Positions 40,651 through 64,000 of a DNA stretch of 64,000 nt are shown one piece after another. Positions within the stretch are counted from its first letter, which is position 1. Each line of letters starts with the position of its first letter. The notes below the pieces were generated by a model, which was given only the letters and a program-made list of their open reading frames with translations, was not told the origin of the DNA and made no database searches. Location of the stretch: the sequence record LT603033.1; one strand, 5' to 3'. The position numbers and the translations under genes were made by a program.

Positions 40651-40893
40651 ATGAAAGTACTGACAGAACTAGAAATGTATCATAGATTTAATAAGTACTA
40701 TCATTTACTTAAGCCTATACAGAGGATTAAATGTCCATTTGAAGAGAAACAGGTTTTAATCTATGAGCACAAGTTCTTTGTATCATTAGGTACAGATCAA
40801 CAAGAGTACTATTTGACGTTGTACTTGATTACATTAATAGATTTAATTCACTATAAAACCAAACAAGCTAATAAAGAGAAATATGAAAACTAA
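40651..40893 (+). CDS. family B protein
   Basis: GTDQQE. Confidence 0.8.
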   Translation: MKVLTELEMYHRFNKYYHLLKPIQRIKCPFEEKQVLIYEHKFFVSLGTDQQEYYLTLYLITLIDLIHYKTKQANKEKYEN

Positions 40894-41227
40894 TATACAA
40901 CTCAAGGTATATAAATCATTTGAACATACATATATCAAAAGTAGTCTATGTAGAGATGTAATGGATTACAAGGGTAAGCCATTCACAATTACCTATGATT
41001 CTTATGTTAGTGATTTATATATATCATTTGTTAATTACGAAAATAAAATATACAAGCACGTTGATATTAAAGATTTAAGTACTTTATCACCAGAGGAATA
41101 CTTTCAGGAATCATTAGTATGGGATTTAGAGTTTCCTATGCCATTAGTACATAAGATGATAGTACTAATGAAAGAATCTAAACAGGAGCCTAATGGTGAT
41201 TATGAAGAACACACAGTTGAGTACTGA
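40883..41227 (+). CDS. family C protein
   Basis: LSPEEYFQESLVWD. Confidence 0.8.
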   Translation: MKTNIQLKVYKSFEHTYIKSSLCRDVMDYKGKPFTITYDSYVSDLYISFVNYENKIYKHVDIKDLSTLSPEEYFQESLVWDLEFPMPLVHKMIVLMKESKQEPNGDYEEHTVEY

Positions 41228-41588
41228 TAATATTAAGAGTTATACAAGCTCAAGTACTGTGACAATCGAAGTGAATTCTATTAATGCTGGTAATGCAGTA
41301 GATAAGTTCTTTATTGCTCAAGGGTACAGGAAAGATATTCATCAATATTGTTCAGTATATGGGGAGTACAATAGTACTGAAGATATAATTTATTGGTCAA
41401 CACATCAAGATTATCTAACTAAAATTGGCGTTCCAGATGTTAGTACTTTATCTGAAGAAGAATACTTTCAGTACAGCTTAGTACATGATGTACCTATACC
41501 TTTAGGGTTAATCAAGGGTATACAGGAAGAGGTTCATAAGCTTAAATCCATGAGTAAAGGTACTTTCATTAGAACAGTGCAATACTAG
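41193..41588 (+). CDS. family C protein
   Basis: LSEEEYFQYSLVHD. Confidence 0.8.
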   Translation: MVIMKNTQLSTDNIKSYTSSSTVTIEVNSINAGNAVDKFFIAQGYRKDIHQYCSVYGEYNSTEDIIYWSTHQDYLTKIGVPDVSTLSEEEYFQYSLVHDVPIPLGLIKGIQEEVHKLKSMSKGTFIRTVQY

Positions 41589-41589
41589 C

Positions 41590-41618
41590 TTGACAGTACT
41601 TTTCATTACTGATATAGT
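41590..41618 (+). promoter_or_regulatory. sigma70 promoter, extended -10
   Basis: TTGACA-17-TGaTATAGT. Confidence 0.7.
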
Positions 41619-41649
41619 ACCTGTACGTTAATCATTAGGGTAGAAAATT

Positions 41650-41895
41650 ATGTTAAATTTTTTAAATTTCCTTATCGTCTTGTGTATTGTTCTTGGGATT
41701 GCACCATTTGTATTATATTTCATGGATTCAGATGAAATGCAGAAGATGAATTGCACAAGGACAGGACAGAGTAGAGTAGAGACGATTCTTATGCCTGTTA
41801 CGGTTATTGTTAACAACATGCCCATTACGAACATGGTCCCTACCCTAACGACAACGTACCAGTACTCTTGTGCTGACGGAGAGAGGTGGAGATGA
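41650..41895 (+). CDS. membrane-anchored hypothetical protein
   Basis: N-terminal hydrophobic helix; Cys pair in the soluble part. Confidence 0.7.
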   Translation: MLNFLNFLIVLCIVLGIAPFVLYFMDSDEMQKMNCTRTGQSRVETILMPVTVIVNNMPITNMVPTLTTTYQYSCADGERWR

Positions 41896-42203
41896 AATTT
41901 AATATAGCAAAAACATCTAATATATGTATATTTGGTTATGCCGAAGAGTTGGGTGATATTGACATTCTTTTGTACAAAAAGGATGGTGTTATGCATTTCA
42001 AGTACCAGGATGAAGAGGCAGACAATTATCTTTTACCTAATTTAGTACAAATGCAGGAAGATGAATTATTCCAGTACAGCTTAGTATACGACATTGATAT
42101 TTGCACGATGCCAGTACTAATTAGTATTCAAAAAGTGATGCTCGATATGTATGATAAGCTAATACAAGGTATGTCAGGGAGGATCATTGAAATTGACATA
42201 TAA
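41886..42203 (+). CDS. family C protein
   Basis: MQEDELFQYSLVYD. Confidence 0.8.
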   Translation: MEMKFNIAKTSNICIFGYAEELGDIDILLYKKDGVMHFKYQDEEADNYLLPNLVQMQEDELFQYSLVYDIDICTMPVLISIQKVMLDMYDKLIQGMSGRIIEIDI

Positions 42204-43142: not shown

Positions 43143-43345
43143 TGCAAAAGATTAATACGATAACATTAAATGCATTACAGGATTCATTATTAGATAGTAT
43201 TAAGATGTATTACAATATACATTTGAAGGGTGGTATTGATAATTACGATTATTATTTGAGTTTAATTACATTTGAGCACCTTTCAGTACAGGACAGGATT
43301 TTACATCCTACAAATCCTAGGTATCCATCGATAGGTAAATTATGA
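43142..43345 (+). CDS. hypothetical protein
   Basis: TAATG coupling. Confidence 0.65.
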   Translation: MQKINTITLNALQDSLLDSIKMYYNIHLKGGIDNYDYYLSLITFEHLSVQDRILHPTNPRYPSIGKL

Positions 43346-43890
43346 ATGAGATAGAGTTATTAGCACACAAGATAAGTACAATAATGCTTATCCTCAATAA
43401 CAACCATCCTATATCGCATATAGATGGAATCCTGAGTCAGAGGACAGGTGGTAGTTTATATTTGTCCATAAACGCAGATATCGCAAGGAAATACATTGAT
43501 ATTGATGTTGAAATCGAATATGATACAACGGGGATTGTTGATGTAGGTGCATTAATCAGTTCAAATCCAGTATCAGCATCCCCATTGACCAAAGATGTTA
43601 GTACAGGATTCGAAGGATATTTGTGGTACAATACCAATGATGATTATTTTATATATCAGCATTCCAATACAAATTATGATGAAGACAAATTTCAGTTCAT
43701 AGACCCTTATGATGAAGCTGAAGTATTTCAAAAATCATTAATCACAAAACCGCATGAGATGATGTATCTAATGTTATTCAGTACAATGCATTTGAATCCA
43801 TTAATTAAAGGTTTAAAATTTTATATTCAATTAAATTTAGTCCATGTAGTTTATGATTTATTAATGCAAGGATATAGTTATGAAGTATAA
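43342..43890 (+). CDS. family C protein
   Basis: DEAEVFQKSL; duplicate of 43962-44468. Confidence 0.8.
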   Translation: MNEIELLAHKISTIMLILNNNHPISHIDGILSQRTGGSLYLSINADIARKYIDIDVEIEYDTTGIVDVGALISSNPVSASPLTKDVSTGFEGYLWYNTNDDYFIYQHSNTNYDEDKFQFIDPYDEAEVFQKSLITKPHEMMYLMLFSTMHLNPLIKGLKFYIQLNLVHVVYDLLMQGYSYEV

Positions 43891-43938: not shown

Positions 43939-43961
43939 CATCCATCAATAGGTAATAATAT

Positions 43962-44468
43962 ATGAATGAGATAGAATTATTAGCACACAAGATTAGTACA
44001 GTAATGCTTATGCTCAAGAATAATCATTCTATGCATAAGTACATTTATATAGGTGATTTACGCATAGAAGATAGATATGATAAATTATCGTTTTTGTTTA
44101 AAGATGAAAGTAATGCAAAAGTTTGTTTTGCAGCATTTGCCCAAGGCAATCCAGAACAAGCATCTCCTGTTATATACGAAAATAGTGAAGGGTATTTGTG
44201 GGTCAACACAAACGATTATTTCTTTTATGATTTGAAACAAAATGATGAAGTAGAAGCACGAATTGATTTAATTGATATTAGTTCAGATTGTAGTTCTGAA
44301 TTATTTCAGAAATCGTTATTATACAGTCCTCGTCAAATACATTATCTAAAGTTATTCAGTTCATTGTACGCGAATCCTTTAATTAAGGGTTTTAAATTTT
44401 ATATCAAAATTCCGTACCTTTCAAACGTTTATGATATTTTGATGCAAGGATATAGTTATGAAGTATAA
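43962..44468 (+). CDS. family C protein
   Basis: SSELFQKSLLYS. Confidence 0.8.
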   Translation: MNEIELLAHKISTVMLMLKNNHSMHKYIYIGDLRIEDRYDKLSFLFKDESNAKVCFAAFAQGNPEQASPVIYENSEGYLWVNTNDYFFYDLKQNDEVEARIDLIDISSDCSSELFQKSLLYSPRQIHYLKLFSSLYANPLIKGFKFYIKIPYLSNVYDILMQGYSYEV

Positions 44469-44769
44469 AATGATGTATACCCCAGATATGATTTATGTTG
44501 AATTAGAAGATGATGACGATGGGTGGAATTTGATTTATTCAAGAAGTTCAGGTTGGTACATGGCACATTTAAATGATTCGATAGTTACAGATTATTTTGT
44601 AGATTTCAATACATTATCCGATGAAGAATTGTTCCAACAGCAATTAGTGATTGACACGGGTGGTTATGATGTCTTATTATTAAAAAAGATACAGAAAGCT
44701 GTTATTGATTTTAAGCCCATGATATGGCAAAGGAAATATTATGACCTCGAAGTACCGTACCAGCAATGA
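44458..44769 (+). CDS. family C protein
   Basis: LSDEELFQQQLVID. Confidence 0.8.
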   Translation: MKYKMMYTPDMIYVELEDDDDGWNLIYSRSSGWYMAHLNDSIVTDYFVDFNTLSDEELFQQQLVIDTGGYDVLLLKKIQKAVIDFKPMIWQRKYYDLEVPYQQ

Positions 44770-45635: not shown

Positions 45636-46120
45636 AGTTTAGTTTAGATGCTGCATTTAAATATGTTCACAAGATAGAAACAATATACAGTACATTATGT
45701 GCAATACAATCAGTATCATCTGAGTTTGATGTTGGTGAAAAATATCAGGTATGGAATAATACATTTCTAAACAAAGAACGTTGCTCTACGGGGTTTAATA
45801 TTTTAACATTTAATCCCAGCAATTGTTACCCAGAGAAGCATGAACGTTATCCGAATGACGACATGTGGTTTGATTACACAAAAGATGGTGATATGTCATC
45901 CCTTGTAGTTCCTGATGATTTTAATGCCGAAGATTTAACGGAAGAGTGGTGGTTTCAACAGAATTTAGTACACGATGATATTGATTTATTTTTTTATGTA
46001 GTATTTAAAATGCTTTACCACAACAATATATTAAAAGATAGTGTGTTTTTTTCATGTCTATATATTGATGATTTGTACAATGAAATCCAAATCAACATTC
46101 CCAGCACGCCTGTATCGTAA
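45614..46120 (+). CDS. family C protein
   Basis: LTEEWWFQQNLVHD. Confidence 0.8.
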   Translation: MQYMYDLEFSLDAAFKYVHKIETIYSTLCAIQSVSSEFDVGEKYQVWNNTFLNKERCSTGFNILTFNPSNCYPEKHERYPNDDMWFDYTKDGDMSSLVVPDDFNAEDLTEEWWFQQNLVHDDIDLFFYVVFKMLYHNNILKDSVFFSCLYIDDLYNEIQINIPSTPVS

Positions 46121-46135
46121 GATATGGGCTTTTTT
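46108..46135 (+). terminator. Rho-independent terminator
   Basis: GCCTGTATC-GTAA-GATATGGGC-TTTTTT; followed by promoter TTGACA-17-TATCAT at 46146-46174. Confidence 0.75.
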
Positions 46136-46202
46136 CGTTTTGGTATTGACAAAGAAGTGCAAAGCTGTTATCATGTGTAATCATTTTAAAGGAGAACATA
46201 TA

Positions 46203-46715
46203 GTGAGTTTCATAATCCCAAGTACATACGAAGATGCATCAAGTGCAGTTCATAAGATTCATTATATTTTTAATTTAATTATTAGATCTGCAAAAAATAA
46301 AATGTATGCACCTCTTGTGGAATACGATAAAAATGAGGAAATTTTTGTTAGCACAGACCAAATTATTTTTCCATATTTCAATGAAGATAGATTGTGGTTC
46401 ATGCATTTAGCTGCATTACAAAAATATAAAATGTCAATTCGTAATAATTTGGATATACCGTTATATCATCCTGATATTGGAGAGGATGAATATTTTCAGT
46501 ACAGTACAGTACACCGCCATGAAGATATCTTTGTTGCTATGCTTATTGCTAAATTGAATACCGTTGATTTGGAGCAGTACAAATACAATAATAAATCATG
46601 TAAGATCATAATCCCTGCATTCATAGCTCTTTATGATTATGTGGTGCATAACAAAAAAGATGATACATATGCTTTCAATGAAGAGTATTTGAATTTTTTT
46701 AAGGAGAACATATGA
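46203..46715 (+). CDS. family C protein
   Basis: GTG start behind GGAG; GEDEYFQYSTVH. Confidence 0.75.
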   Translation: MSFIIPSTYEDASSAVHKIHYIFNLIIRSAKNKMYAPLVEYDKNEEIFVSTDQIIFPYFNEDRLWFMHLAALQKYKMSIRNNLDIPLYHPDIGEDEYFQYSTVHRHEDIFVAMLIAKLNTVDLEQYKYNNKSCKIIIPAFIALYDYVVHNKKDDTYAFNEEYLNFFKENI

Positions 46716-47239: not shown

Positions 47240-47855
47240 TATGACCAGAATTAAAATGTATGATTTGATGCAGTACAGTAAAATTGCCATTCCGGTGCTT
47301 AATAAAGTGCTGGATGCATTCATTGCCAAATACCCTGAGAATTCAGTGTTATGTATTCCATTTAGTGTTCCAGATAAAGATGATATATTTCAAGTGAATG
47401 TCAGTACACGTGGTATTACATTGCAGCAGAAATACATGGATACGGAATATTATGGAATAAAGTTGGATTCAGTACAGGGTTCTAAATCAGCCTATGATTT
47501 TTTTGTTCCTAATAACATCGAGTCATGGGAAACAAACATTTCAAAGAAAGATGAAAATGATGTTCCTATTAGTGGTGTGTTCAACAATAAAGTTTTTTAT
47601 TATTACGAAACCGACAAATTCCCTGAAGAGTTATATTACAATTCAGAAATGAATGAAGATGTAGATGCATTCATGTTTCAATTATCTTTAGTACATGATA
47701 TCATTGATGTTCAAGAGTTAAGAGCAGAAATCAATTTAGCTAAAGAGTTATCGGACATGCTGCCACCGTTTAGTATGCTTTTTTGTGAAGGTGGTTATTT
47801 TTCAAAAGAAGTGTTTGAACATTTCGTAGATGTTGTAAAAGGGTTGGATATATAG
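47232..47855 (+). CDS. family C protein
   Basis: DAFMFQLSLVHD. Confidence 0.8.
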   Translation: MNDMTRIKMYDLMQYSKIAIPVLNKVLDAFIAKYPENSVLCIPFSVPDKDDIFQVNVSTRGITLQQKYMDTEYYGIKLDSVQGSKSAYDFFVPNNIESWETNISKKDENDVPISGVFNNKVFYYYETDKFPEELYYNSEMNEDVDAFMFQLSLVHDIIDVQELRAEINLAKELSDMLPPFSMLFCEGGYFSKEVFEHFVDVVKGLDI

Positions 47856-48926: not shown

Positions 48927-49478
48927 ATGAGTTCAATGAGTTTATTAGATACATTAGAAAAAGACAGAAGTGCAATTAAGCGTTTAAAAGAGCAAGTACA
49001 AAAGATTGTATACAACGTTGATAAGTTTGAAGTCCCAGGAAGATTTGGTGATATTTCCCATACGGAGATCAAATCCCTTAAGTCAGATTTGTTGATTAAA
49101 AATAAAAATGGGTTGATTTTAGTTTTGAGTTCAGATATGATGGGGGCAACACATAGTTATAATGCAGTATCGGTGCGTTCAGAGTGTGAAGGTATATATC
49201 TATCACAGGGTTTCAATAGCGAGACACAGGTTTGTTTTTGTGATGCAGTACATGACCCTATGAAGTTCACGAGAAGTGAAGCCCAAGCGTTATTAGAGCT
49301 ATCAGACGAGAGTTTGTTTCAGTACAGTACAATGTATGACAATGATAAGCTTCGTTGTATGTACGCTGTAAAGCATTATACACAGGAGTTCTCTGGATTT
49401 GCATACCTTTTAGTTAGAACCAATACCAGATATATTGATATGTTAGAAGATTACATCGATAAAGTTGTTAATGTATGA
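48927..49478 (+). CDS. family C protein
   Basis: Start trimmed; LSDESLFQYSTMYD. Confidence 0.8.
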   Translation: MSSMSLLDTLEKDRSAIKRLKEQVQKIVYNVDKFEVPGRFGDISHTEIKSLKSDLLIKNKNGLILVLSSDMMGATHSYNAVSVRSECEGIYLSQGFNSETQVCFCDAVHDPMKFTRSEAQALLELSDESLFQYSTMYDNDKLRCMYAVKHYTQEFSGFAYLLVRTNTRYIDMLEDYIDKVVNV

Positions 49479-50105: not shown

Positions 50106-50160
50106 NNNNNNNNNNNNNNNNNNNNNNNNNNNNNNNNNNNNNNNNNNNNNNNNNNNNNNN
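50106..50160. other. assembly gap (55 N)
   Basis: Run of N flanked by GC-rich tracts. Confidence 0.99.
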
Positions 50161-50276
50161 TATTGTGTTTTTCAGAGTACAGTTCATGTTTCCTGAAACA
50201 AAAAATACCCCGCCCCCGCAACGTGCTCCTTATATTGGAGTTTACCTTATTAATTACAGTAGAGATTACAATTGAA

Positions 50277-50660
50277 ATGAAGATGCAAATAAAATATAAT
50301 GAATTTTGTGCAAGGACATGGATGTACACTGGTGAGTTAGTTACGCACTGTAACTTATACAAGGGTGATTTAAACTACGCCAGGGACAAGATTTTAAAGT
50401 ACTGGAATGCTGACTTTTATTTGATGGATTTTAGTACTGGGTTTCATGGGATATCTATCGAGATGCCGGACTATACAGTACTTGATGATGCTGCACTGTT
50501 TCAGGAGGCATTAGTATTTGATAAGAAGTACATCTGTACATTAGAAGAGATGATTGAATTACAGCGTAGAATTAAATGTATTCACAGGGAATGTATAGAT
50601 ATCTGGTGCAGTACTGGTGAGGCCGATTTATGGAAATTTTTTAATCTAGGAGAAGAGTGA
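50277..50660 (+). CDS. family C protein
   Basis: Start trimmed; LDDAALFQEALVFD. Confidence 0.75.
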   Translation: MKMQIKYNEFCARTWMYTGELVTHCNLYKGDLNYARDKILKYWNADFYLMDFSTGFHGISIEMPDYTVLDDAALFQEALVFDKKYICTLEEMIELQRRIKCIHRECIDIWCSTGEADLWKFFNLGEE

Positions 50661-50821
50661 TGGAATTTGATTTTTTAATATCAGTACATTCTTTTAAGCA
50701 CAGTTATCAGTACTTTTGTAATTTAAACAAAGGTGATTTGATTATGGATACAGATACAGAGGCTGTATACAGTTCTAATATTCTGTACAAATTCAGTACT
50801 AATCTGAAGGAGATTTTATGA
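50660..50821 (+). pseudogene. truncated copy of the 51186 gene 5' end (53-aa ORF)
   Basis: First 27 codons nearly identical to 51186 onward, then unrelated sequence; lacks the family C motif. Confidence 0.65.
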
Positions 50822-51186
50822 AAAAAGAAATTAGAATTCAATTCGGTATGAGGAAAAAAGAGGTCATCTGTACACTGAATCATGCGGACGTGGAAATGGG
50901 TGGTGCATTACAAAAATTCTCACATTTTGTTCTTGTACTATATGAAAATGGGTCTTTTAAAATCTTCACATATGATGATTCAAAAAATTACCGTAATGAT
51001 TTTGTAAATCTTACAGTACTGTCAGAAGAGGAATTCTTTCAGGAAAGTACTGTCTGGAATTTACCAGGAGCACCAATTGAATACGTCCGTGCTACACAGG
51101 TAGAGATGATCAAAACAATGCAGAACTATCCAGAAGATTATATGACTAAGTTTCCTGAATCTTTTAATGTAGAGGTTGAGTACTGA
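50818..51186 (+). CDS. family C protein
   Basis: LSEEEFFQESTVWN. Confidence 0.8.
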   Translation: MKKEIRIQFGMRKKEVICTLNHADVEMGGALQKFSHFVLVLYENGSFKIFTYDDSKNYRNDFVNLTVLSEEEFFQESTVWNLPGAPIEYVRATQVEMIKTMQNYPEDYMTKFPESFNVEVEY

Positions 51187-51542
51187 TGGAATTTGATTTT
51201 TTAATATCAGTACATACTTTCAAGCACAGTTATCAGTACTTTTGTAATTTAAACAAAGGTGATTTAATGCACAGTGCGAATGAGTATATTCATTACACTC
51301 AGGGTAAATTTACATTCATTGATTACAGTTCATTACAGTATCCACACCAAGATATGCCGGACTATACATTAATGGATACCGCAGAACTATTCCAAGAATC
51401 ATTAGTATTTGATAAGAAGTACTTGTGTACATTTGAAGAAGTTATTGCAATACAAAATGAAATGAAAGAGTATGCTGCTTTGCATAAACCCAATGCAAGT
51501 ATTAATCAAGAATACAAATTCAATTTAGGAATTCAAGAATGA
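51186..51542 (+). CDS. family C protein
   Basis: MDTAELFQESLVFD. Confidence 0.8.
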   Translation: MEFDFLISVHTFKHSYQYFCNLNKGDLMHSANEYIHYTQGKFTFIDYSSLQYPHQDMPDYTLMDTAELFQESLVFDKKYLCTFEEVIAIQNEMKEYAALHKPNASINQEYKFNLGIQE

Positions 51543-51898
51543 CATATGATTATTCTATGTACTATTATAAGTTACCTAAAGGATGGGACTTGTGCTGTAA
51601 TCTTATTAAGGGCGACTCGGAACATGAGTTGAGTTTATATATGCATTACAAAGATTCTTGTTTTAAATTTATTCATGTATTACATGATGGCTATGACTAT
51701 GAATCTGAGAGTCTTATAGATTATACAGTACTGGACGATGGTGAACTATTTCAGGAAGCATTAGTGTTTGATAAGAATAAGTACTCCTGTACATTTGAAG
51801 AAATGGTTTCTTTGCAAAATGAAATGAAGAGATTTGAAAAAGAAAACGTATTTAATCCATCCCCATCAAGAACGAATAATTATTATTTCAATATATGA
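51539..51898 (+). CDS. family C protein
   Basis: LDDGELFQEALVFD. Confidence 0.8.
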   Translation: MTYDYSMYYYKLPKGWDLCCNLIKGDSEHELSLYMHYKDSCFKFIHVLHDGYDYESESLIDYTVLDDGELFQEALVFDKNKYSCTFEEMVSLQNEMKRFEKENVFNPSPSRTNNYYFNI

Positions 51899-52403: not shown

Positions 52404-52874
52404 ATGAGTTTAGAAAGAGCATTAGAGATTGCGAAGTTAATTGATTTATGCAGCAAAGAAATTGTAGCAAATTGTCTCAATGGATATCTATTCAAGGAAG
52501 GTAAATCTTATTGTCGAATGAGATACGATGACAGTAGTGAGTACATTCACATGTACGATGAAAACTTAGATTCTTCTGAAACAACACTCAATGGGTGTGA
52601 TGTTAATTTGGAAGATAATTACATGTACTTCTGTCGTGATGCTGATATTTTAATACAAGATTCTGACATTCTAACTGGTGGTGAAGAGAAACATCTTCCG
52701 TATTCAGTACTGGATAATAACTGGGGTAGTGAAGATTACTATTTCCAGCAGAGTACTATATATAATGAAGATATACTTGACAAACTTGTTATTTCTTGGT
52801 ACTTTCATAACACGGATTATAGTAGCTTCTACATAGACTTGGATCTACTAAGAGTACTTAAAGAGGATATATGA
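52404..52874 (+). CDS. family C protein (acidic subfamily)
   Basis: WGSEDYYFQQSTIYN. Confidence 0.8.
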   Translation: MSLERALEIAKLIDLCSKEIVANCLNGYLFKEGKSYCRMRYDDSSEYIHMYDENLDSSETTLNGCDVNLEDNYMYFCRDADILIQDSDILTGGEEKHLPYSVLDNNWGSEDYYFQQSTIYNEDILDKLVISWYFHNTDYSSFYIDLDLLRVLKEDI

Positions 52875-53313: not shown

Positions 53314-53802
53314 ATGTCATTACAAAGTGCGTTGAAAGAAGCAAAGAAGATTCATGAGTACATGATTATGGTACAGGAAGGTTCAGTACCAGGTGTATAC
53401 AAAACATCAGATACGGAATTCTTCGTTAAGGATAGAGATGATTATGACGATTCAGAGGTATGTGCAGAAACATTAGTACTGCACACTGATACTGGTGACA
53501 GTGATAACTGTGAATATCATATGTACAACCAGTACATTAGTTATTGCCGTAATGAAGATATTACCATCTACAACACAGATAGTGATGCTGATGACACTAT
53601 CATTCCTTATTCAGTACTGGAAGGTCAGTGGGATAGTGAAGAATATTACTTCCAGAATAGTACTATCTACAATGAAGAAGAACTGGATGTTATTGTGATT
53701 ATGTGGTATTTCAAAAGTATTGACTCCAGTAGTTTCTATTTTGATTATGAATATGTAGAGAATACAGTAGGAGAAGGTAATGTCATTACAAAGTGCTCTT
53801 GA
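53314..53802 (+). CDS. family C protein (acidic subfamily)
   Basis: GQWDSEEYYFQNSTIYN. Confidence 0.8.
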   Translation: MSLQSALKEAKKIHEYMIMVQEGSVPGVYKTSDTEFFVKDRDDYDDSEVCAETLVLHTDTGDSDNCEYHMYNQYISYCRNEDITIYNTDSDADDTIIPYSVLEGQWDSEEYYFQNSTIYNEEELDVIVIMWYFKSIDSSSFYFDYEYVENTVGEGNVITKCS

Positions 53803-54232
53803 AAAAGCAAAAGAACTACATGGATACTTTGAAGATATAAAGGCCGGAAAGTTCAAAGAAGTGTACAAAGCCGAGAACGGTAACTACTACAAAGATGAAA
53901 TGTATAATAACTCCGTTGGTGTAAGGGTTATTCTTGGGTTGAATTCCAATAGTCCTATATCGTTTTCTGAATACAATAGAGATGCAGAATTTATTAGTTA
54001 TGTTGAAAATGGTAGCATTCGTTTTATTAATAGACAAAAACCATTAATTTTGAATTATGAAGTACTGGATGGTCAGTGGGATAGTGAAGAGTATTACTTC
54101 CAAAACAGTACTGTATATGATGATGAAGTACTTGAAGCATTAGTTATTATGTGGTACTTCAAGAGTATTAGCTTCCCTCGATTTTATTTGGATTTCGAAG
54201 ATCTTCGTAAAGATCCAGAAGGTATAGAATGA
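53780..54232 (+). CDS. family C protein (acidic subfamily)
   Basis: GQWDSEEYYFQNSTVYD. Confidence 0.8.
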   Translation: MSLQSALEKAKELHGYFEDIKAGKFKEVYKAENGNYYKDEMYNNSVGVRVILGLNSNSPISFSEYNRDAEFISYVENGSIRFINRQKPLILNYEVLDGQWDSEEYYFQNSTVYDDEVLEALVIMWYFKSISFPRFYLDFEDLRKDPEGIE

Positions 54233-54851: not shown

Positions 54852-55297
54852 GTTACGAAAGTGCAATCAAGAAAGCAAATGATATTCTAAAAGTTGTTCA
54901 GTTCTTCAAAGAAAATCCTGAATACTTAGCTGATGAAAACCATGATCACGATGAGAGATTGAGACGAAAAATTGTCGCTTTATTTGACACTAATGCGGAT
55001 AATTATAGTCTAATTGAGTTAGCATACGATTATATTTCATTGAACCGAAACGGACATTTAGTTAATATAGAAAGACATGCGAGTGAAGAATCTTTTAAAA
55101 TTTCAGACATTTTATCCCTGAGTACTGAAGAAGGGTACTTCCAGGGTAGTACTGTTTATGAACAAGGAACACTTGACAATCTATGCACATTCAGTGTAAT
55201 ATATCAGAAATCAGTACTGGATGTATTTTATCTTGACACTGCTGAACTGGATACACTAATCAATTTTGTTACTACTGAAGAGGCCACATTTGAGTGA
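54848..55297 (+). CDS. family C protein
   Basis: STEEGYFQGSTVYE. Confidence 0.8.
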   Translation: MSYESAIKKANDILKVVQFFKENPEYLADENHDHDERLRRKIVALFDTNADNYSLIELAYDYISLNRNGHLVNIERHASEESFKISDILSLSTEEGYFQGSTVYEQGTLDNLCTFSVIYQKSVLDVFYLDTAELDTLINFVTTEEATFE

Positions 55298-55830
55298 TGA
55301 AAGTTAACATCAATGACTTTGATGCATTACAAGATTTATCAAAAAAGATTCGTATCATCGTACCAGTACTCAAAAAATGTAGTACTGGTTTAATTGATCC
55401 TAGTACTGTTGTTAATGAGAAGTACAATTTTCATCGTGTATTACAGGGTACAGGTGCATTTCAGAAGTGTGATGTACGTGAGAAACACGTAATTGATACA
55501 TCATTGTTTTCTATTGGTGCACCTGTGTCGAATAATTCTATTTTCCTGGATAACGCAGGAAATATTCAACAATTAACATTTAAGAAAAGGAAAAAGAACA
55601 ATAACATTGGTGTATACGCGATGAAGTGGGGTCAACCTGATTTGAAGCGTGAAATTCACATCCCTAAGTACAATTACAATGCATTTGACGAACAGTGTTT
55701 TCAACTATCGTGTACTGACCCTGACTATGCAATCATTCAGTTCTATATGGAATTGCAGATAGCATTTAACAGTAATTTATATATTAACTTGTTGGCGATG
55801 AACATCGATGAAGTATTCAAAAACATTTAA
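55294..55830 (+). CDS. family C protein
   Basis: FDEQCFQLSC. Confidence 0.75.
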   Translation: MMKVNINDFDALQDLSKKIRIIVPVLKKCSTGLIDPSTVVNEKYNFHRVLQGTGAFQKCDVREKHVIDTSLFSIGAPVSNNSIFLDNAGNIQQLTFKKRKKNNNIGVYAMKWGQPDLKREIHIPKYNYNAFDEQCFQLSCTDPDYAIIQFYMELQIAFNSNLYINLLAMNIDEVFKNI

Positions 55831-56026: not shown

Positions 56027-56195
56027 CATTGCTAAACTATTCAATATATATTCTACTAGAATGATGCAAACAGACTCATATAGTACTGAATTCAAAGAGT
56101 TGAAAGTCCTGATGTACTTGGGAACCCAATATCAGGAACAAGTTATTTTGGAATATATTAATTCGCTGAAGAAGGATATCCGTTATGTACGATGA
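56004..56195 (+). CDS. family B protein (dispersed)
   Basis: YLGTQYQE. Confidence 0.8.
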   Translation: MKIIDQNDIAKLFNIYSTRMMQTDSYSTEFKELKVLMYLGTQYQEQVILEYINSLKKDIRYVR

Positions 56196-56745
56196 TTTAG
56201 ATATTGCGTTTGAACGTATGGTAATTTTAATGCAATGTGCAGAAATGCATGAAACAATCCGTCGCACCAAAGGGATTGAATATACAAGTAAACTATTCTC
56301 ATACGAAAGTCGTCGAGGGATGGATCATTTTTACTGCACTGATTGTTCAAAGTTTTCAGTACTGAAATATTATCATCCTACTGTTTCCAATAATAGTTTA
56401 ATATCCACATATGACGGTGATCTGTTTAGTGTAATGTATGACACATTACATCCATCAATTTCAATCTATAAAGATTGCGATAGTAGTTTATCGTATATAA
56501 TTGAAGATTACTTATCTCCTAATACTGAAGAGAATATTTTTCAGAACAGTGTGTTGCATGATGAATTAAGTATAAAATGCATCTATATGTTCAATAAGTT
56601 AAAAGAGTACGCCGATAATAATTACTTAATTGATAAGTTAGCAGTATTGTCTGTTTCCGTTTTTAATACAAATGACATTGATATGAAATACTATAATGAG
56701 ATTTGTAAAGTACATCATATGTATAAGGAATTACTATGTTATTAA
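56185..56745 (+). CDS. family C protein
   Basis: NTEENIFQNSVLHD. Confidence 0.8.
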   Translation: MYDDLDIAFERMVILMQCAEMHETIRRTKGIEYTSKLFSYESRRGMDHFYCTDCSKFSVLKYYHPTVSNNSLISTYDGDLFSVMYDTLHPSISIYKDCDSSLSYIIEDYLSPNTEENIFQNSVLHDELSIKCIYMFNKLKEYADNNYLIDKLAVLSVSVFNTNDIDMKYYNEICKVHHMYKELLCY

Positions 56746-57343: not shown

Positions 57344-57706
57344 ATGAACACATTAAGTATTACATACTATACAACTAAAAAATTAGTTACTTGTTTAATA
57401 TCATTGAAGACAAACCATGATGATATGTTTGATATGGCTGCATATGAATTAGAATTATCAGAAGATGGCTTCAAGAGCTATGAAGTATATAGCTATGTTC
57501 GTGAAGATGTAATTGACACTACACTAATGCAAGAGGATGAGTTATTCCAAGAAAGTTTAGTATGGGATAATAAGTACGATTGTAACTTTGATTTCTTATG
57601 TTTAATCCAGAAAGAAATGAAAAGAATCTTTGATAATTATCCAGTGAAGAGATTGAGTACTGGACCGGAGCAGTACAGGAGAATTTTATTCCGTTATGAA
57701 GACTGA
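57344..57706 (+). CDS. family C protein
   Basis: MQEDELFQESLVWD. Confidence 0.8.
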   Translation: MNTLSITYYTTKKLVTCLISLKTNHDDMFDMAAYELELSEDGFKSYEVYSYVREDVIDTTLMQEDELFQESLVWDNKYDCNFDFLCLIQKEMKRIFDNYPVKRLSTGPEQYRRILFRYED

Positions 57707-58031
57707 ATTAGTGAAAGTAATGTACGCTACTCATATTAAACTACTACTTGTGAAATTTGATTATAATAAAAAACATAATGATTTCTATACTTTAATTCGT
57801 GATGAAAATACATTCTCCTTGCGATGCAACAATATACCGTTGAAGATAAATGATTTTACTTCACTTGACGAGGGTGAATTATTTCAAGAATCATTAGTTT
57901 TTAATAGTAATATAAAAATTGATATAGAAGTTATTAAAAAATACCAGATTTTATTGAACAAAATTATGAATTGTTATCCATGTGAAATAGGAGGTCATAT
58001 GCAGTTCAAATCAAAAATGTATGAATTATGA
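57696..58031 (+). CDS. family C protein
   Basis: LDEGELFQESLVFN. Confidence 0.8.
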   Translation: MKTELVKVMYATHIKLLLVKFDYNKKHNDFYTLIRDENTFSLRCNNIPLKINDFTSLDEGELFQESLVFNSNIKIDIEVIKKYQILLNKIMNCYPCEIGGHMQFKSKMYEL

Positions 58032-58575: not shown

Positions 58576-58601
58576 CACCCACCGATTCTTTGTGATATAA
58601 T
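58572..58601 (+). promoter_or_regulatory. sigma70 promoter, extended -10
   Basis: TTGACA-18-TGaTATAAT. Confidence 0.7.
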
Positions 58602-58634: not shown

Positions 58635-59111
58635 ATGTCCAACGAACTCACATTCACCAATGCACAAAAAATAGCAAAAGACATTATCAGGGTTTATAAA
58701 TTCCTTGCGAATGTTACTGAAGATTTTTCCGTGGGGGAACATAAAGTTATTAAACGAAATGGATACCTTTCATTTATGGATGGGTTACTCTATAGTTCAG
58801 ATGAATCAACTTGTAGCATTAGAGTTCTTGATGAAGTACCAAGTGGTGATTTTATTTCATACCATTTTCCAAGTTCAGATAATTTCAAATACTACAATCA
58901 TCTTCTTATAAATGAAGCATTTAATACGATTGTAATTAACACTGAAGAAGAGTTCTTCCAGTACAGTACTGTGTATCCAGAGAGGATTGTTTTCAGTTCA
59001 GTGATTTACACTGCCCTTAAAAATGAACTAAATTCCGATAGTGATCATTTCTACTTGGACCTGAACAATGTCGATTGTATTATTGAGTACATGGAGAAAA
59101 ATGGTTTATGA
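58635..59111 (+). CDS. family C protein
   Basis: NTEEEFFQYSTVYP. Confidence 0.8.
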   Translation: MSNELTFTNAQKIAKDIIRVYKFLANVTEDFSVGEHKVIKRNGYLSFMDGLLYSSDESTCSIRVLDEVPSGDFISYHFPSSDNFKYYNHLLINEAFNTIVINTEEEFFQYSTVYPERIVFSSVIYTALKNELNSDSDHFYLDLNNVDCIIEYMEKNGL

Positions 59112-60818: not shown

Positions 60819-61344
60819 GAATGTAAAATGCATTACTGAAATTTGTATAAAATTAATGAAAATTTTCATTAACCCAAAATACAAAAAACGTTCATTACAT
60901 CATAATATTGATGAGCATTGTACCATTAATATACTAGGTAGTATTCTTGATGTAAAATATGATGGTAGAATGTTATTTGGCATAAGAGAAGAGAAAATAG
61001 ATGATGCATTCTTTTCCTGTAAAGATAAATTTGAACCTTCTGATTATAAAGTAATTATTCGTGATGATAGCATCTACATTAGTAGTGATTATTCAAATTA
61101 CTTCGATAAAATATACAATGAAAACGTTGACTACCATTATGAAATGATAGATTTACCAGTAACAGACATTGATATGGAGAGAATCAAATTTTCATTATCA
61201 GATAATGAGTACTTAGGTATACAAACATATTATTCACTACAAGGAAAGATTCCACCTGCTATGTATATAAGGATTGAGATTGGTAATGTATTCAATGATA
61301 AGGTTATATCTATTGCTGATAAAATATTGAGGGTTGAATTATGA
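60802..61344 (+). CDS. family C protein (degenerate motif)
   Basis: DMERIKFSLSD at the equivalent position. Confidence 0.7.
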   Translation: MYIENENVKCITEICIKLMKIFINPKYKKRSLHHNIDEHCTINILGSILDVKYDGRMLFGIREEKIDDAFFSCKDKFEPSDYKVIIRDDSIYISSDYSNYFDKIYNENVDYHYEMIDLPVTDIDMERIKFSLSDNEYLGIQTYYSLQGKIPPAMYIRIEIGNVFNDKVISIADKILRVEL

Positions 61345-61904
61345 ATATCAATGATTACCAATTTCATAGGCTTGAATTTCGTCATTGTGTTGCATTTGCA
61401 AAAACATTGATGTGCATCATTGACACTCTTTCATCCAAACAATTTCGTAAGGATAATGATTTATTTCTGAAAAAAGGTCGTGTAACATCAACCGATATCG
61501 GTATTGAACTATTTGTTGATATCAGTGTTGATACCGGAGACAGTACAAGGGTTGGTTGTATAGGTCATATTGGTACACATTGCTTCACATGGAATCCAAA
61601 TACAAGTCAAGTACGAGTTGATTATAGAAATTCACGTTGGGTTGATCTTAGTACTGAATCAGATTTAGAATCAGCTATGTTCCAGCTAAGTTTAATTCAC
61701 AATCCTAATGAACTTCTTTACATTATTACTTTCAGTTATCTGTTACAAAACTACGATAATCCATCAGGATTTTTCATAGAATCAGATATAGATGAAATTA
61801 TGGAAGAGATTCCCAGTTTAAAGAATATTCTCGAAGAAAAAGATTTCTATGAAGACTTCAGAGATTTATACGACATGCACTTGGAGTTATTTAAGAATGG
61901 ATAA
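61341..61904 (+). CDS. family C protein
   Basis: DLESAMFQLSLIHN. Confidence 0.8.
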   Translation: MNINDYQFHRLEFRHCVAFAKTLMCIIDTLSSKQFRKDNDLFLKKGRVTSTDIGIELFVDISVDTGDSTRVGCIGHIGTHCFTWNPNTSQVRVDYRNSRWVDLSTESDLESAMFQLSLIHNPNELLYIITFSYLLQNYDNPSGFFIESDIDEIMEEIPSLKNILEEKDFYEDFRDLYDMHLELFKNG

Positions 61905-62415
61905 AGATGATATTCTAATTAGACTAATTAATAGTTTAATAAAGTTCTCAAATAATGATGTCGATACATACAAAGTGGGGGATATTGAATTTAAATCATT
62001 TGGTATGTACGGTGAGGATAAAACATATTATGCGTCAATGAAATTTCAAGATTTTCACGAGATGTTAATATCGTTATCATATGAAGATGTTGATCCAAGA
62101 TGGAGTTCCAGTATTTCACTATCGAGAATGGTAATTCGTAGTAAGCATCGTTATATTTCGTCAAAGAATACTCCTAACTTGATTAATATTGTGTTGAATG
62201 AAAATACAAATCCCCTATCTAAACATGATATCGTACCGTTAACCGATGAAGTTCTTTTTCAATTGAGTACCATTTGTGATGAAGATGTGATATCATGTAT
62301 GAAAATTTATGAGAAGGTTGGGAGTGATATTCCCATGAACTATTACCTAACTATAGATGGAACGTACCTTCGAGATGAGGTTCTAGCGTACATTGACAGT
62401 GTTTTACCAAAATAA
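61897..62415 (+). CDS. family C protein
   Basis: LTDEVLFQLSTICD. Confidence 0.8.
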   Translation: MDKDDILIRLINSLIKFSNNDVDTYKVGDIEFKSFGMYGEDKTYYASMKFQDFHEMLISLSYEDVDPRWSSSISLSRMVIRSKHRYISSKNTPNLINIVLNENTNPLSKHDIVPLTDEVLFQLSTICDEDVISCMKIYEKVGSDIPMNYYLTIDGTYLRDEVLAYIDSVLPK

Positions 62416-62436
62416 AGACCCGTATGGGTCTTTTTG
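62415..62436 (+). terminator. Rho-independent terminator
   Basis: AAGACCC-GTAT-GGGTCTT-TTT; followed by promoter TTTACA-17-TATACT at 62447-62475. Confidence 0.8.
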
Positions 62437-62502
62437 TGTTTATGGCTTTACAAGAGCATTCAGGTGTGTTATACTTGATTTTAAATAGAGTTGGAGGAAT
62501 CT

Positions 62503-63069
62503 ATGAGTACTGAATTAATTAAAGAAGTCACATTACTTCTGAAGCATTGTTTTAAGTTCATTCCTGATACTGGCTCACGCCAGTACATTAAAGTTAATGA
62601 GAAATATAACATCAATATCCTTGTATCTGAAACTGCGAGCAGTTATGCTAACATTGAGTTGGATTCTGAAGAAAAATATACAGTATTACAAATCATAGCA
62701 GATGTACAACGTAAACAAGATTATCGTTCTTCATTTTACAACGATTATCTGTGTGTTTGCTCAAACTTCAGTGAGAATAAAATTGTGTATAAGAATTTAT
62801 ACACACATGAAGTGATTGATACATATAATTATAAAATTTCATCTGATGAATACAATGTTCTAATGTTCAACGCAAACCTTTTGTATGATGCCAGTACTGT
62901 ACGCTGTTTAGAGTTAGCATATAAAATTCCAAAGATCATGGAAAGAAAAGATTTGATTCACTTTAAAACTATTTTAAAATACAGTACAAAAGAATTAGAG
63001 GATTTAGTACAGGCTCTTAAGAATTTCATTAATGAACATGTACCTGTTAAATTCGAGGATGCACAATGA
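62503..63069 (+). CDS. family C protein (degenerate motif)
   Basis: GGAGG RBS; NVLMFNANLLYD. Confidence 0.75.
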   Translation: MSTELIKEVTLLLKHCFKFIPDTGSRQYIKVNEKYNINILVSETASSYANIELDSEEKYTVLQIIADVQRKQDYRSSFYNDYLCVCSNFSENKIVYKNLYTHEVIDTYNYKISSDEYNVLMFNANLLYDASTVRCLELAYKIPKIMERKDLIHFKTILKYSTKELEDLVQALKNFINEHVPVKFEDAQ

Positions 63070-63650
63070 ACCATATCAGAACTAAAATTTTGAGACTCAT
63101 GCATGACATTGCAGAACTTTCAGAGATTCATGACATTACGGAAATTGTTGAATTTGATAATTATCGACTGAAAATTGAAAACAAATCCAAACATCGTTTT
63201 GGTTCAGTTCAGTTGGATGTATATAAAACTTATGAATTTTCTAAAAAAATTAAAAGTTCATGGGATACGATTACTATGTACATTCGCACATCCAGAAATC
63301 GTGAACGTATTGGTTCTATTTCTTCTAATATGGTATTTGCGAATGCATTACATGAAAAAATGAATAAAATTGTAGAATCTGATTTCAGTGAAGATGATGG
63401 TTTTATTGGGTTGGATGTTCCACCAGAATTAGACCAAAGTGAAGATATTCGAGATGCATTCATTTTCCAGAAATCATTGTTGGACAATTACAAAGAATTC
63501 GAGTACTTAATGCTTTGTTACGATACTGCAAAAATTCTTGATTGTGGTGAACTAGTTATGTACAATGATTTTATCAATTGCAAGACTGATGTTCTGAATA
63601 CACTACTTCAAAATATAGAATCTGTTAAGGAAAAATATGAACGCTTATAG
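63066..63650 (+). CDS. family C protein
   Basis: RDAFIFQKSLLD. Confidence 0.8.
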   Translation: MNHIRTKILRLMHDIAELSEIHDITEIVEFDNYRLKIENKSKHRFGSVQLDVYKTYEFSKKIKSSWDTITMYIRTSRNRERIGSISSNMVFANALHEKMNKIVESDFSEDDGFIGLDVPPELDQSEDIRDAFIFQKSLLDNYKEFEYLMLCYDTAKILDCGELVMYNDFINCKTDVLNTLLQNIESVKEKYERL

Positions 63651-64000
63651 TTATATGACAGAACGCCATCAGTTATTATATGATATCAGTAAAAAAATGC
63701 TATCAATTGTTGGTAGTGCGAAAGAAATTGAAAAACAATATCTCATCCGTGATGTATCAATTTCATCTAAATGTTGGTCAAATGAATATTACGACCACGG
63801 TATTCTTACTATTTCTGGGGCCAGAAATATTTGTATTGTAAAAAATAAAAGTAAAAGTAATGAAGAGTGTGAGATTAGAACCGATATACAAATTAAGGAT
63901 GATGGAAGTTTTTCACATCACCCATTCCATATTAGTACTATTGGTGTTTTATATAATATTAAAGTACTATTCGGTGATGAAGAGTATGTGTTAAAAGCTA
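63637..64000 (+). CDS. hypothetical protein (3' end outside window)
   Basis: AAGGA RBS; open to the window end (MNAYSYMTERHQ...FGDEEYVLKA). Confidence 0.75.
   Translation, partial: MNAYSYMTERHQLLYDISKKMLSIVGSAKEIEKQYLIRDVSISSKCWSNEYYDHGILTISGARNICIVKNKSKSNEECEIRTDIQIKDDGSFSHHPFHISTIGVLYNIKVLFGDEEYVLKA

What the first reader, a model, noticed from the sequence alone, without database searches (positions are those of the whole stretch)
40883..64000. Family C: about 40 unrelated-looking proteins sharing one acidic EExxFQxS(L/T)(V/I)xD motif, a possible adaptor library
Seen: 38 ORFs of 100-210 aa in this span carry a clear (D/E)(D/E)xxFQx(S/A/N/Q)(L/T)(V/I) motif, with 3 more degenerate and 1 outlier at 11344. 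The motif lies roughly 30-65 aa from the C-terminus and is followed by a predicted amphipathic helix. The N-terminal 60-130 aa differ in length and sequence between subfamilies. Known by analogy: poxvirus ankyrin/F-box proteins and bacterial protease adaptors combine a constant docking motif with variable substrate-binding domains. Inference: one hub (phage or host protease, chaperone, RNA polymerase or a virion-loading site) is addressed by dozens of variable heads, which would be an undescribed modular host-takeover or anti-defence system occupying over a third of this window.
Basis: partly seen in the sequence, partly recalled or inferred. Interest (0 to 1): 0.88.

Follow-up and report, generated by a model that had tools for sequence, protein, structure and literature searches.

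The report
Giant-phage multigene family with FQ core
About 37 neighbouring genes in this stretch of a giant E. coli phage (65 or more genome-wide) encode small acidic proteins of one undescribed family, and their shared "EExxFQxS" signature appears to be part of the folded core of one compact domain rather than a detachable docking tag.

Summary
The window is Escherichia phage vB_Eco_slurp01 (Asteriusvirus, 348 kb), record bases 62001-126000. On the + strand of 40883-64000 there are 36 complete genes and one cut by the window end. All belong to one family with an invariant Phe-Gln, against fewer than 1 expected by chance.

The family is larger than reported:
- 65-68 genes in this phage, about 11% of its genes, all on the + strand.
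- 46 in phAPEC6, 30 in Klebsiella phage RaK2, 24 in EJP2, and a few in GAP32 and CBB.
- Similar arrays occur on metagenome contigs.

Database searches gave little: no Pfam or NCBIfam match, 22 separate PHROGs of unknown function, and no structural match in the PDB or ESM Atlas.

AlphaFold models of a long and a short member are confident (pLDDT 90.5 and 85.7). Each is a single compact alpha/beta domain, and the motif is a well-ordered helix inside it. This argues against a linear docking motif joined to separate heads.

The genes are under purifying selection (pN/pS 0.25) and still duplicate in tandem. They sit behind near-consensus sigma-70 promoters and are absent from the published virion proteomes of phAPEC6 and RaK2.

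Best reading: an early-expressed, diversifying battery of small cytoplasmic binders for host takeover or anti-defence. Their function is untested. The single-hub idea is not excluded, but it has no support.

The parts
40883..41227 (+). family member, 114 aa, short class (SPEEYFQESLVWD)
   Evidence: profile hit and motif
41193..41588 (+). family member, 131 aa (SEEEYFQYSLVHD)
41590..41618 (+). sigma-70-like promoter, 11/12 with TG, in an intergenic gap
41892..42203 (+). family member, 103 aa (QEDELFQYSLVYD)
43342..43890 (+). family member, 182 aa; older copy of a recent tandem pair
43962..44468 (+). family member, 168 aa; extra paralogue absent from phAPEC6; junction repeats 95-97% identical
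44458..44769 (+). family member, 103 aa
44741..45307 (+). family member, 188 aa
45614..46120 (+). family member, 168 aa
46108..46129 (+). terminator-like hairpin plus T-run at the end of the preceding gene
46146..46174 (+). sigma-70-like promoter, 11/12 with TG, intergenic
46203..46715 (+). family member, 170 aa
46712..47239 (+). family member, 175 aa (FQMQCI variant)
47241..47855 (+). family member, 204 aa
48060..48575 (+). family member, 171 aa
48572..48916 (+). marginal degenerate member, 114 aa (RFQYETAF)
   Evidence: E 7e-4 among 20 candidates
48927..49478 (+). family member, 183 aa
50106..50160 (.). run of N in an intergenic spacer; not part of any family gene
50272..50300 (+). sigma-70-like promoter, 11/12, intergenic
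50322..50660 (+). family member, 112 aa, short class; lies wholly downstream of the N run
50658..50742 (+). 85-nt copy (96% identical) of the 5' end of gene 51186-51542: remnant of a partial duplication
50818..51186 (+). family member, 122 aa
51186..51542 (+). family member, 118 aa; short-class member that was modelled (F69, Q70)
51539..51898 (+). family member, 119 aa
51908..52402 (+). family member, 164 aa (WDSEEYYFQ subgroup)
52404..52874 (+). family member, 156 aa
52871..53311 (+). family member, 146 aa
53314..53802 (+). family member, 162 aa; long-class member that was modelled (F113, Q114)
53780..54232 (+). family member, 150 aa
54229..54543 (+). family member, 104 aa
54848..55297 (+). 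family member, 149 aa (EEGYFQGS)
55294..55830 (+). marginal degenerate member, 178 aa (EQCFQLSCT)
   Evidence: E 0.01 among 20 candidates
56185..56745 (+). family member, 186 aa
56736..57338 (+). possible decayed member, 200 aa (DEDAMFTNDIT); not significant by profile
57344..57706 (+). family member, 120 aa; phAPEC6 has one more paralogue after it
57696..58031 (+). family member, 111 aa
58039..58575 (+). family member, 178 aa
58572..58601 (+). perfect sigma-70 consensus promoter (12/12, TG) in the 60-nt gap
58635..59111 (+). family member, 158 aa
59108..59602 (+). family member, 164 aa
59568..59930 (+). family member, 120 aa
59914..60327 (+). family member, 137 aa
60327..60818 (+). family member, 163 aa
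60802..61344 (+). possible decayed member, 180 aa; not significant by profile
61341..61904 (+). family member, 187 aa
61897..62415 (+). family member, 172 aa
62491..63069 (+). possible decayed member, 192 aa (MFNANLLYD); not significant by profile
63066..63650 (+). family member, 194 aa
63637..64000 (+). family member cut by the window end (full gene 193 aa in the record; its motif lies beyond the window)

Best explanation
**Shown**
- Window 40883-64000 is most of a 29-kb tandem array (record 102883-131775). Its genes belong to one paralogous family of small (103-229 aa), mostly acidic, single-domain proteins.
- The family is specific to the RaK2-like jumbo phages (Asteriusvirus, Alcyoneusvirus, a few in Mimasvirus) and their metagenomic relatives.
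- The genes are kept by purifying selection and still arise by tandem duplication.

**Shown by prediction**
- Each protein is one compact alpha/beta domain: a beta-meander, then the motif helix, then a long helix, then a closing strand. Long members add an N-terminal helix.
- The signature (S/T)EEx(Y/L/F)FQxS(L/T)(V/I)(Y/W/H/F)(D/N) is a highly confident helix-turn inside this domain.

**Inferred about the motif**
- It is the structural keystone of an orphan fold. S/T-E-E caps the helix. F, the residue before it, and L/T-V/I-aromatic pack into the core. Q and S make conserved polar contacts.
- It is not a portable docking peptide.

**Inferred about function**
- The genes are read early by the host RNA polymerase from sigma-70-type promoters. 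The products stay in the cytoplasm and are not packaged.
- The hypervariable sheet and loops give each paralogue its own binding surface. The array would then act as a battery of binders or inhibitors of different host proteins, for host takeover or counter-defence. Duplication and divergence would supply new specificities.
For: **Family and significance:**

**Size and spread**
- 65 profile hits plus 3 motif-only ORFs in the 348-kb genome, all on the + strand.
- 46, 30, 24, 3 and 3 hits in phAPEC6, RaK2, EJP2, GAP32 and CBB.
- 19 consecutive members on a 28-kb metagenome contig.
- Only 174 representatives among 1.84 billion, all 55-208 aa (the best 150 listed), and 146 of those 150 carry FQ.

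**Structure**
- pLDDT 90.5 / pTM 0.86 for the long member and 85.7 / 0.82 for the short one; the motif is helical, with block-mean pLDDT of 98 (long) and 91-93 (short).
- Conserved hydrophobic positions run along the whole chain.
- The motif is never found outside this size class or relative position.

**Orphan status**
- No Pfam or NCBIfam match. Members are split over 22 PHROGs of unknown function.
- No PDB sequence hit. Foldseek against the PDB finds nothing.
- VIA-align best Z is 2.5 (long) and 4.8 (short). Atlas TM is 0.32 or less.
- BFVD returns only uncharacterised proteins of the same phage group.

**Real genes:** pN/pS is 0.25 over 34 genes against phAPEC6.

**Turnover:** one paralogue is gained here and one in phAPEC6; junction repeats are 95-97% identical; there is an 85-nt 5' gene fragment.

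**Early expression (inferred)**
- 4 of the 7 best sigma-70 matches on the + strand fall in the 5.3% of sequence that is intergenic (P = 2.4e-4).
- These phages carry a sigma factor but no RNA polymerase is reported for them (PMC7247149).
- In CBB, sigma-70-like promoters cluster before the short hypothetical ORFs taken to be early genes (PMC5259590).

**Not in virions**
- The phAPEC6 orthologues gp404c-gp466c are absent from its 62-protein virion list.
- The RaK2 array, ORF362-440, lies outside both of its structural clusters.

**Charge:** median pI is 4.9, against 7.8 for other small ORFs upstream.
Against: - No function has been tested, and no partner is known.
- Burial of F and Q was inferred from secondary structure, confidence and conservation. 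It was not measured, because coordinates are not returned.
- Absolute invariance of Phe-Gln across more than 200 sequences that otherwise share about 15% identity is stronger than most purely structural positions show. A functional role (shared partner, ligand or catalysis) therefore remains possible.
- The long and short classes align only around the motif, and their models hit each other's relatives only weakly in BFVD. Common ancestry of the beta-sheets is therefore likely but not shown.
- Overall pN/pS of 0.25 shows no general positive selection, as a simple arms-race picture might predict. A pairwise average cannot detect selection at individual sites.
- Promoters are consensus matches, not mapped transcription starts.
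- Virion mass spectrometry can miss small or rare proteins.
Confidence: 0.5

Rival explanations
1. The FQ segment, with its acidic cap, is a surface epitope by which every paralogue docks to one hub, such as a protease, chaperone, RNA polymerase or clamp. The variable sheet selects different clients. The array would then be an adaptor library.
For: - F and Q are invariant, and E, E and S nearly so, in sequences that are otherwise about 15% identical.
- Only 28 columns around the motif align between the long and short classes.
- The segment Q-x-S-L-(V/I)-aromatic loosely recalls the beta-clamp-binding motif QL[SD]LF. That consensus is recalled from my own knowledge and is only a lead.
Against: - The motif is a confident helix inside a compact single domain, not in a linker or a tail.
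- Flanking conserved residues are hydrophobic, as in a protein core.
- The motif never occurs on any other protein architecture in the genome.
- The one complex test that was run, against the E. coli beta clamp, gave no answer and counts neither way.
Confidence: 0.12
2. The conserved polar residues (E, E, Q, S) form a small-molecule, metal or nucleotide binding site, or a catalytic site. The family would then be, for example, sponges or modifying enzymes, with the variable remainder tuning specificity.
For: - Invariant Q and nearly invariant E and S lie close together in sequence.
- The proteins are small, acidic and cytoplasmic.
Against: - There is no similarity to any enzyme or sponge family in sequence or fold.
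- 65 copies of one enzyme or sponge in a single genome would be unusual.
- No other conserved polar residues are available to complete a site.
Confidence: 0.1
3. ExxYFQ followed by S or G is a cleavage site for a protease that cuts after Gln, as with TEV NIa (ENLYFQ/S) or 3C (LEVLFQ/GP). Cleavage would release the C-terminal helix as a targeting peptide or propeptide.
For: Several members match the TEV consensus literally, for example EEGYFQGS at 54848-55297. The consensus is recalled from my own knowledge.
Against: - The site is helical and structured in both models.
- No trypsin-like hit was found in the phage genome. The 3C model also found nothing, but it failed in the control genomes too, so that search is uninformative.
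- The residue after Q is highly variable (E, Y, Q, L, N and others).
- The proteins are not found in virions, where phage maturation proteases act.
Confidence: 0.02
4. The paralogues co-assemble with each other into a hetero-oligomer or lattice, and the conserved helix is the common interface. An example would be an intracellular scaffold or compartment of this phage group.
For: - There are many co-transcribed paralogues sharing one conserved element.
- RaK2-like phages are cytologically unexplored. This is an inference only.
Against: - Copy number and membership differ between close strains, which does not suit a fixed assembly.
- No oligomer test was run.
Confidence: 0.05

Closest known systems
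PHROGs 12674, 13866, 9317, 15629, 34017 and 17 others (all 'unknown function')
   Same: These are the database's own entries for these very proteins and their orthologues. 36 of 36 members hit one or more of them.
   Different: PHROGs splits the family into 22 unlinked groups and records no function. The unifying FQ signature and the size of the superfamily are not captured.
[quoted passage not shown]
   Same: Both are massive amplifications of one small domain within one giant-phage lineage, with function unknown.
   Different: The fold here is different and has no match. There are about 65 copies, mostly in one co-oriented array. This family is not singled out in any paper I could find.
Poxvirus ankyrin/F-box (PRANC) proteins and bacterial protease adaptors
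   Same: They are multicopy viral families with one constant element and a variable remainder.
   Different: In those families the constant element is a separate module that docks to a known hub (Skp1/cullin, ClpXP). Here the constant element is part of a single domain of 100-200 aa, and no hub is known.
SUKH-type immunity protein arrays (own knowledge: Zhang, Iyer and Aravind 2011)
   Same: They are tandem arrays of small, divergent alpha+beta proteins thought to neutralise diverse partners. Functionally this is the closest analogy to the proposed binder battery.
   Different: No SUKH/SMI1_KNR4 Pfam hit was found. No solved chain of any fold exceeds Z 2.5 (long model) or 4.8 (short model).
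Polo-box domain (six-stranded sheet plus helix)
   Same: It is the best structural match of the short model: 9fjg_A, Z 4.8, rmsd 3.8 over 73 residues.
   Different: The Z-score is well under the tool's own noise level of 7-8, identity is 6%, and the long model does not match. This is a common sheet-plus-helix arrangement, not evidence of kinship.
Bacterial beta-clamp-binding motif QL[SD]LF / QLxLxL (own knowledge)
   Same: There is a Gln followed by a small or Ser residue, Leu and an aromatic: Q-x-S-L-(V/I)-(F/Y/W/H).
   Different: The spacing differs, position 2 is variable, and the segment is structured rather than terminal or disordered. The complex prediction gave no answer.

Membership tests
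   The motif is helical, with block-mean pLDDT of 98 (long) and 91-93 (short), inside a compact domain with pTM 0.86 / 0.82.
   N-terminal parts are not alignable between classes. Both models nevertheless show one domain with the same order of elements. Cross-class fold matches are weak.
   All 56 motif occurrences in the genome are in proteins of 103-229 aa at the same relative position.
   Only one complex job was available. The beta-clamp test returned 'no answer'.
Substrates of a Gln-specific (3C / NIa-like) protease | A cognate chymotrypsin-fold protease is encoded by the phage | tested here: inconclusive
   PF13365 (trypsin-like) gave no match while its controls rang. PF00548 (3C) gave no match, but its controls did not ring either.
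Substrates of a Gln-specific (3C / NIa-like) protease | The site is extended and accessible, with a small residue after Gln | tested here: not met
   The site is helical in both models. The residue after Q is mostly E, Y, Q or L.
Virion-packaged internal or ejection proteins | Detected in purified virions | tested here: not met
   From the literature on close relatives: phAPEC6 gp404c-466c are absent from Table 1 of PMC7247149. RaK2 ORF362-440 lie outside the structural clusters.
Any Pfam, NCBIfam or PDB family | Significant sequence or fold match | tested here: not met
Beta-clamp-binding proteins | QL[SD]LF-type motif in an exposed terminus or loop that docks in the clamp pocket | tested here: inconclusive
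   The sequence resemblance is only partial, the segment is structured, and the complex job gave no answer.
Early (host-RNA-polymerase-read) phage gene cluster | Sigma-70-type promoters in front of the transcription units | tested here: met
   Near-consensus sites lie in 5 of the 8 gaps of 25 nt or more. Enrichment P = 2.4e-4. These are consensus matches only, with no transcript data.

The most novel reading that the evidence does not exclude
The invariant acidic-cap/Phe-Gln helix could be an exposed, structured epitope shared by all 65 or so paralogues. Through it each would engage one common host or phage machine, while its hypervariable beta-sheet recruits a different client. That would be a phage-encoded adaptor library built on a fold with no known relative, taking up about a tenth of the genes of a 348-kb virus.
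Probability: 0.12. Interest if true: 0.85.

Novelty: new variant of a known kind. Interest (0 to 1): 0.55.

Why it matters
About 11% of the genes of a giant coliphage, and large arrays in its Klebsiella relatives and in metagenomic relatives, belong to one family. That family has no annotation, no Pfam model and no structural relative.

These phages (PBECO4, 121Q, phAPEC6, RaK2) are used or proposed for therapy, yet over 80% of their genes have unknown function. Showing that dozens of these 'hypothetical proteins' are one diversifying early-gene family does two things:
- It reduces the amount of unexplained sequence.
- It gives a defined set of candidates for host-takeover and anti-defence screens.

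If the members prove to be specific inhibitors of host proteins, the array would be a natural library of small binders on a new scaffold. The result also corrects an appealing but probably wrong reading, that the conserved motif is a docking tag.

Tried and rejected
- **Beta-clamp docking:** Complex prediction of the 118-aa member with DPO3B_ECOLI scored 0.00 in both runs, with the verdict 'no answer'. This is not evidence either way.
- **Protease-site idea:** there is no trypsin-like hit in the phage. The 3C model found nothing, but it also failed in the controls, so that search is uninformative.
- **Sequence searches of known families:** Pfam, NCBIfam and PDB profile searches found nothing.
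- **Structure searches:** Foldseek PDB, VIA-align wide (both models) and Atlas by shape and by features gave no credible match.
- **Bacterial genomes:** A degenerate DNA pattern would give about 10^4 chance hits by my own estimate, so I did not run it.
- **The window's own assembly** is not held. I used the public record through a locus handle instead.
- **RNA runs:** only wastewater metatranscriptome contigs hold parts of the stretch. Contigs cannot show timing or level, so I did not lay reads.
- **Literature:** the Sharanji, jumbo-phage overview, RaK2, CBB and phAPEC6 papers do not describe this family. The Avs5/JADA paper, checked as a lead, concerns phages with infection vesicles and a nucleus-like compartment and was not pursued.
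- **'Amidohydrolase 3' label:** phAPEC6 gp447c, the orthologue of 50322-50660, carries this label, but no Pfam hit supports it here.

Full report
**Where the window lies.** Megablast places the window at 100% identity on Escherichia phage vB_Eco_slurp01, LT603033.1. This is an Asteriusvirus (PBECO4 species) with a 348,043-bp genome. Window base 1 is record base 62001. Every gene under the finding is annotated 'hypothetical protein'.

**The N run.** The gap at 50106-50160 starts 31 nt after the stop of ORF 49850-50074. It ends 161 nt before the annotated start, 50322, of the next family member; an alternative ATG lies at 50277. A near-consensus promoter lies between them at 50272-50300. No family gene crosses the gap, so no claim here depends on continuity across it. 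The public record that I fetched for a genome-wide count has no N. I did not print, inspect or use its letters at that place.

- The pattern FQx[SANQTG][LTIVM][VIL] occurs 34 times in the + frames of 40883-64000. Shuffles give 0.64 on average and at most 3.
- A profile built from the motif-bearing ORFs and iterated converges on 36 complete genes plus one cut by the window end. In their alignment the only invariant columns are the start Met, F and Q.
- Two interspersed ORFs (48572-48916 and 55294-55830) are marginal decayed members. Three others keep only vestiges of the motif.
- F lies 40-75 residues from the C-terminus.

**The family is much larger than the finding.**
- Over the whole phage genome the iterated profile finds 65 ORFs, all on the + strand. 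Three more ORFs carry the motif. That is about 11% of the 595 annotated features.
- The main array runs from record 102883 to 131775, so it continues 7.8 kb past the window.
- A second cluster of 15 members with shorter C-terminal tails lies at record 190-19908. Singletons are scattered elsewhere.
- The A1 profile finds 46 places in phAPEC6, 30 in Klebsiella phage RaK2 (mostly at 245-276 kb), 24 in the divergent Asteriusvirus EJP2, and 3 each in GAP32 and CBB.
- A profile search of 1.84 billion representative proteins returns only 174 hits. The 150 listed are all 55-208 aa, and 146 of them carry the FQ signature.
- Distant members come from metagenome contigs that are themselves arrays. One example has 19 consecutive members in 10 kb of a 28-kb contig.
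- The motif never occurs on a larger or different protein in this genome.

**What is it like? Databases.** Searches give nothing usable. There is no Pfam or NCBIfam family. Members fall into 22 separate PHROGs, all of unknown function. No PDB sequence match was found.

**What is it like? Models.** AlphaFold2 models built with family alignments are confident.
- The 162-aa member 53314-53802 has pLDDT 90.5 and pTM 0.86. Its elements are an N-terminal helix, seven short strands, a small helix, the motif helix (residues 109-115), a long helix (121-135), a strand and a last helix.
- The 118-aa member 51186-51542 has pLDDT 85.7 and pTM 0.82. Its elements are five strands, the motif helix (65-74), a long helix (83-99) and a closing strand.
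- In both, the motif sits in a well-ordered part of a single compact domain (block-mean pLDDT 98 in the long member, 91-93 in the short one).
- Conserved hydrophobic positions run along the entire chain in heptad-like and alternating patterns, as expected of a globular core.
- Within the motif, the conserved residues apart from E, E, Q and S are hydrophobic: the residue before F, F itself, L/T, V/I and an aromatic.
- The preceding S/T-x-E-E is a typical helix N-cap. This is my inference.

**What is it like? Fold searches.** No structure search finds a relative. Foldseek against the PDB finds nothing. VIA-align against 48,161 chains gives a best Z of 2.5 for the long model and 4.8 (polo box) for the short one, both under the tool's noise level. 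ESM Atlas TM is 0.32 or less. BFVD returns only uncharacterised proteins of 121Q, PBECO4, SP27, RaK2, Serratia phage BF, Yersinia phages fHe-Yen9-03/04, GAP32, an Erwinia phage and CBB.

N-terminal parts cluster by BLAST only into groups of 6, 3 and 2, and the rest are singletons, whereas the C-terminal parts link 33 of 41 members. A profile-profile comparison of the long class (81 sequences) with the short class (61) aligns only 28 columns around the motif. The two models share the order sheet, motif helix, long helix, strand. However, each model hits the other class's relatives only weakly. One ancestral domain is therefore likely but not proven.

**Are these working genes, and how do they evolve?**
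- Against phAPEC6, 34 orthologous pairs give pS 0.073 and pN 0.018, a ratio of 0.25. This indicates purifying selection.
- The array is in flux. The window has an extra paralogue (43962-44468) whose junctions repeat at 95-97% identity. phAPEC6 has an extra one after 57706. An 85-nt copy of the 5' end of gene 51186 sits at 50658-50742.

**When and where are they made?** This part is inferred.
- Of the seven best sigma-70 consensus matches on the + strand, four fall in the 5.3% of the region that is intergenic (P = 2.4e-4). They include a perfect TTGACA-18-TATAAT with TG at 58572-58601, and one at 46146 just after a terminator-like hairpin.
- These phages encode a sigma factor and no RNA polymerase is reported for them (PMC7247149).
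- In the relative CBB, sigma-70-like promoters cluster before the short hypothetical ORFs that its authors take to be early genes (PMC5259590).
- None of the phAPEC6 orthologues (gp404c-gp466c) is among its 62 virion proteins. The RaK2 array (ORF362-440) lies outside both structural gene clusters.
- The proteins are acidic, with median pI 4.9 against 7.8 for the other small ORFs upstream.

**Alternatives tested.**
1. A docking motif for one hub. The structural context argues against a linear motif, and the motif is not portable. The segment Q-x-S-L-(V/I)-aromatic loosely recalls the beta-clamp-binding motif, so I spent the single complex job on the E. coli clamp. It gave no answer (reported under tried and rejected).
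2. A cleavage site for a Gln-specific protease. Some members read like a TEV site. However, the site is helical, the residue after Q is variable, and no trypsin-like protease is detectable in the genome. The 3C search was uninformative.
3. A ligand-binding or catalytic site. This is not excluded, but nothing supports it.
4. Virion proteins. The published proteomes contradict this.

**Most likely mechanism.**
- Shown: a lineage-specific, tandemly amplified, selectively maintained family of small single-domain proteins with an orphan predicted fold.
- Inferred: the FQ signature is the keystone of that fold. The genes are early and the products cytoplasmic. The hypervariable sheet and loops give each paralogue a different binding surface, so the array works as a battery of host-directed binders or inhibitors that is renewed by duplication.

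I put about 0.5 on this package. Within it I place roughly 0.7 on 'single domain, structural motif' and about 0.35 on the functional guess. The invariance of Phe-Gln is stronger than structure alone usually demands.

**Novelty.** That RaK2-like phages contain many paralogues has been noted in passing (PMC3622015; PMC5259590). Lineage-specific expansions in jumbo phages are a known phenomenon (PMC7824862). I found no description of this family, its signature, its size or its fold. The literature search was limited to the open library held here. I rate it a new variant of a known kind: a viral multigene expansion, built on an undescribed protein family.

Noticed in passing
window 1-9443, minus strand: There is a tandem array of eight 370-430-aa paralogues with RCC1-like repeats (PF25390, PF00415, PF13540). 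In phAPEC6, proteins annotated 'DNA condensation protein' (gp003-010, gp549, gp551) are virion-associated; I did not check that they are these paralogues' counterparts. This would be a second large paralogous family in the same window.
   Followed up: partly
window 14000-40883, + strand: There is a dense run of about 70 very small ORFs (mostly 60-90 aa) with median pI 7.8, in contrast to the acidic FQ family. None was examined further.
   Followed up: no
record LT603033.1 190-19908 (outside the window; locus L005): A second cluster holds about 15 FQ-family members with a shorter tail (30-46 aa after F). They are interleaved with a HaeIII-like cytosine methylase gene and seven tRNA genes.
   Followed up: partly
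window 50658-50742 versus 51184-51268: An 85-nt segment is 96% identical to the first 28 codons of gene 51186-51542. It makes the annotated 54-aa ORF 50660-50821 look like a truncated duplicate rather than an independent gene.
   Followed up: partly
L004 12072-12449 (phAPEC6 gp447c): The orthologue of family member 50322-50660 is annotated 'amidohydrolase 3' in phAPEC6. No Pfam support for that label was found for the window's copy, so it is probably an annotation artefact.
   Followed up: partly
L002 (metagenome contig from run ERR3179246, 28 kb; 12 kb fetched): 19 consecutive FQ-family genes lie on an uncultured contig of 32.6% GC that matched no phage record in the collection searched (tblastn of one member found none). 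This suggests undiscovered relatives of the RaK2-like phages that carry the same kind of array.
   Followed up: partly
window 50106-50160: The run of N in the window corresponds to a place where the public record has ordinary letters (N count 0 in the whole record). It is therefore masking rather than a true assembly gap. The letters were not read.
   Followed up: no
window 46108-46174: A terminator-like hairpin with a T-run is followed 17 nt later by an 11/12 sigma-70 promoter with TG. This is a clean transcription-unit boundary inside the array.
   Followed up: partly
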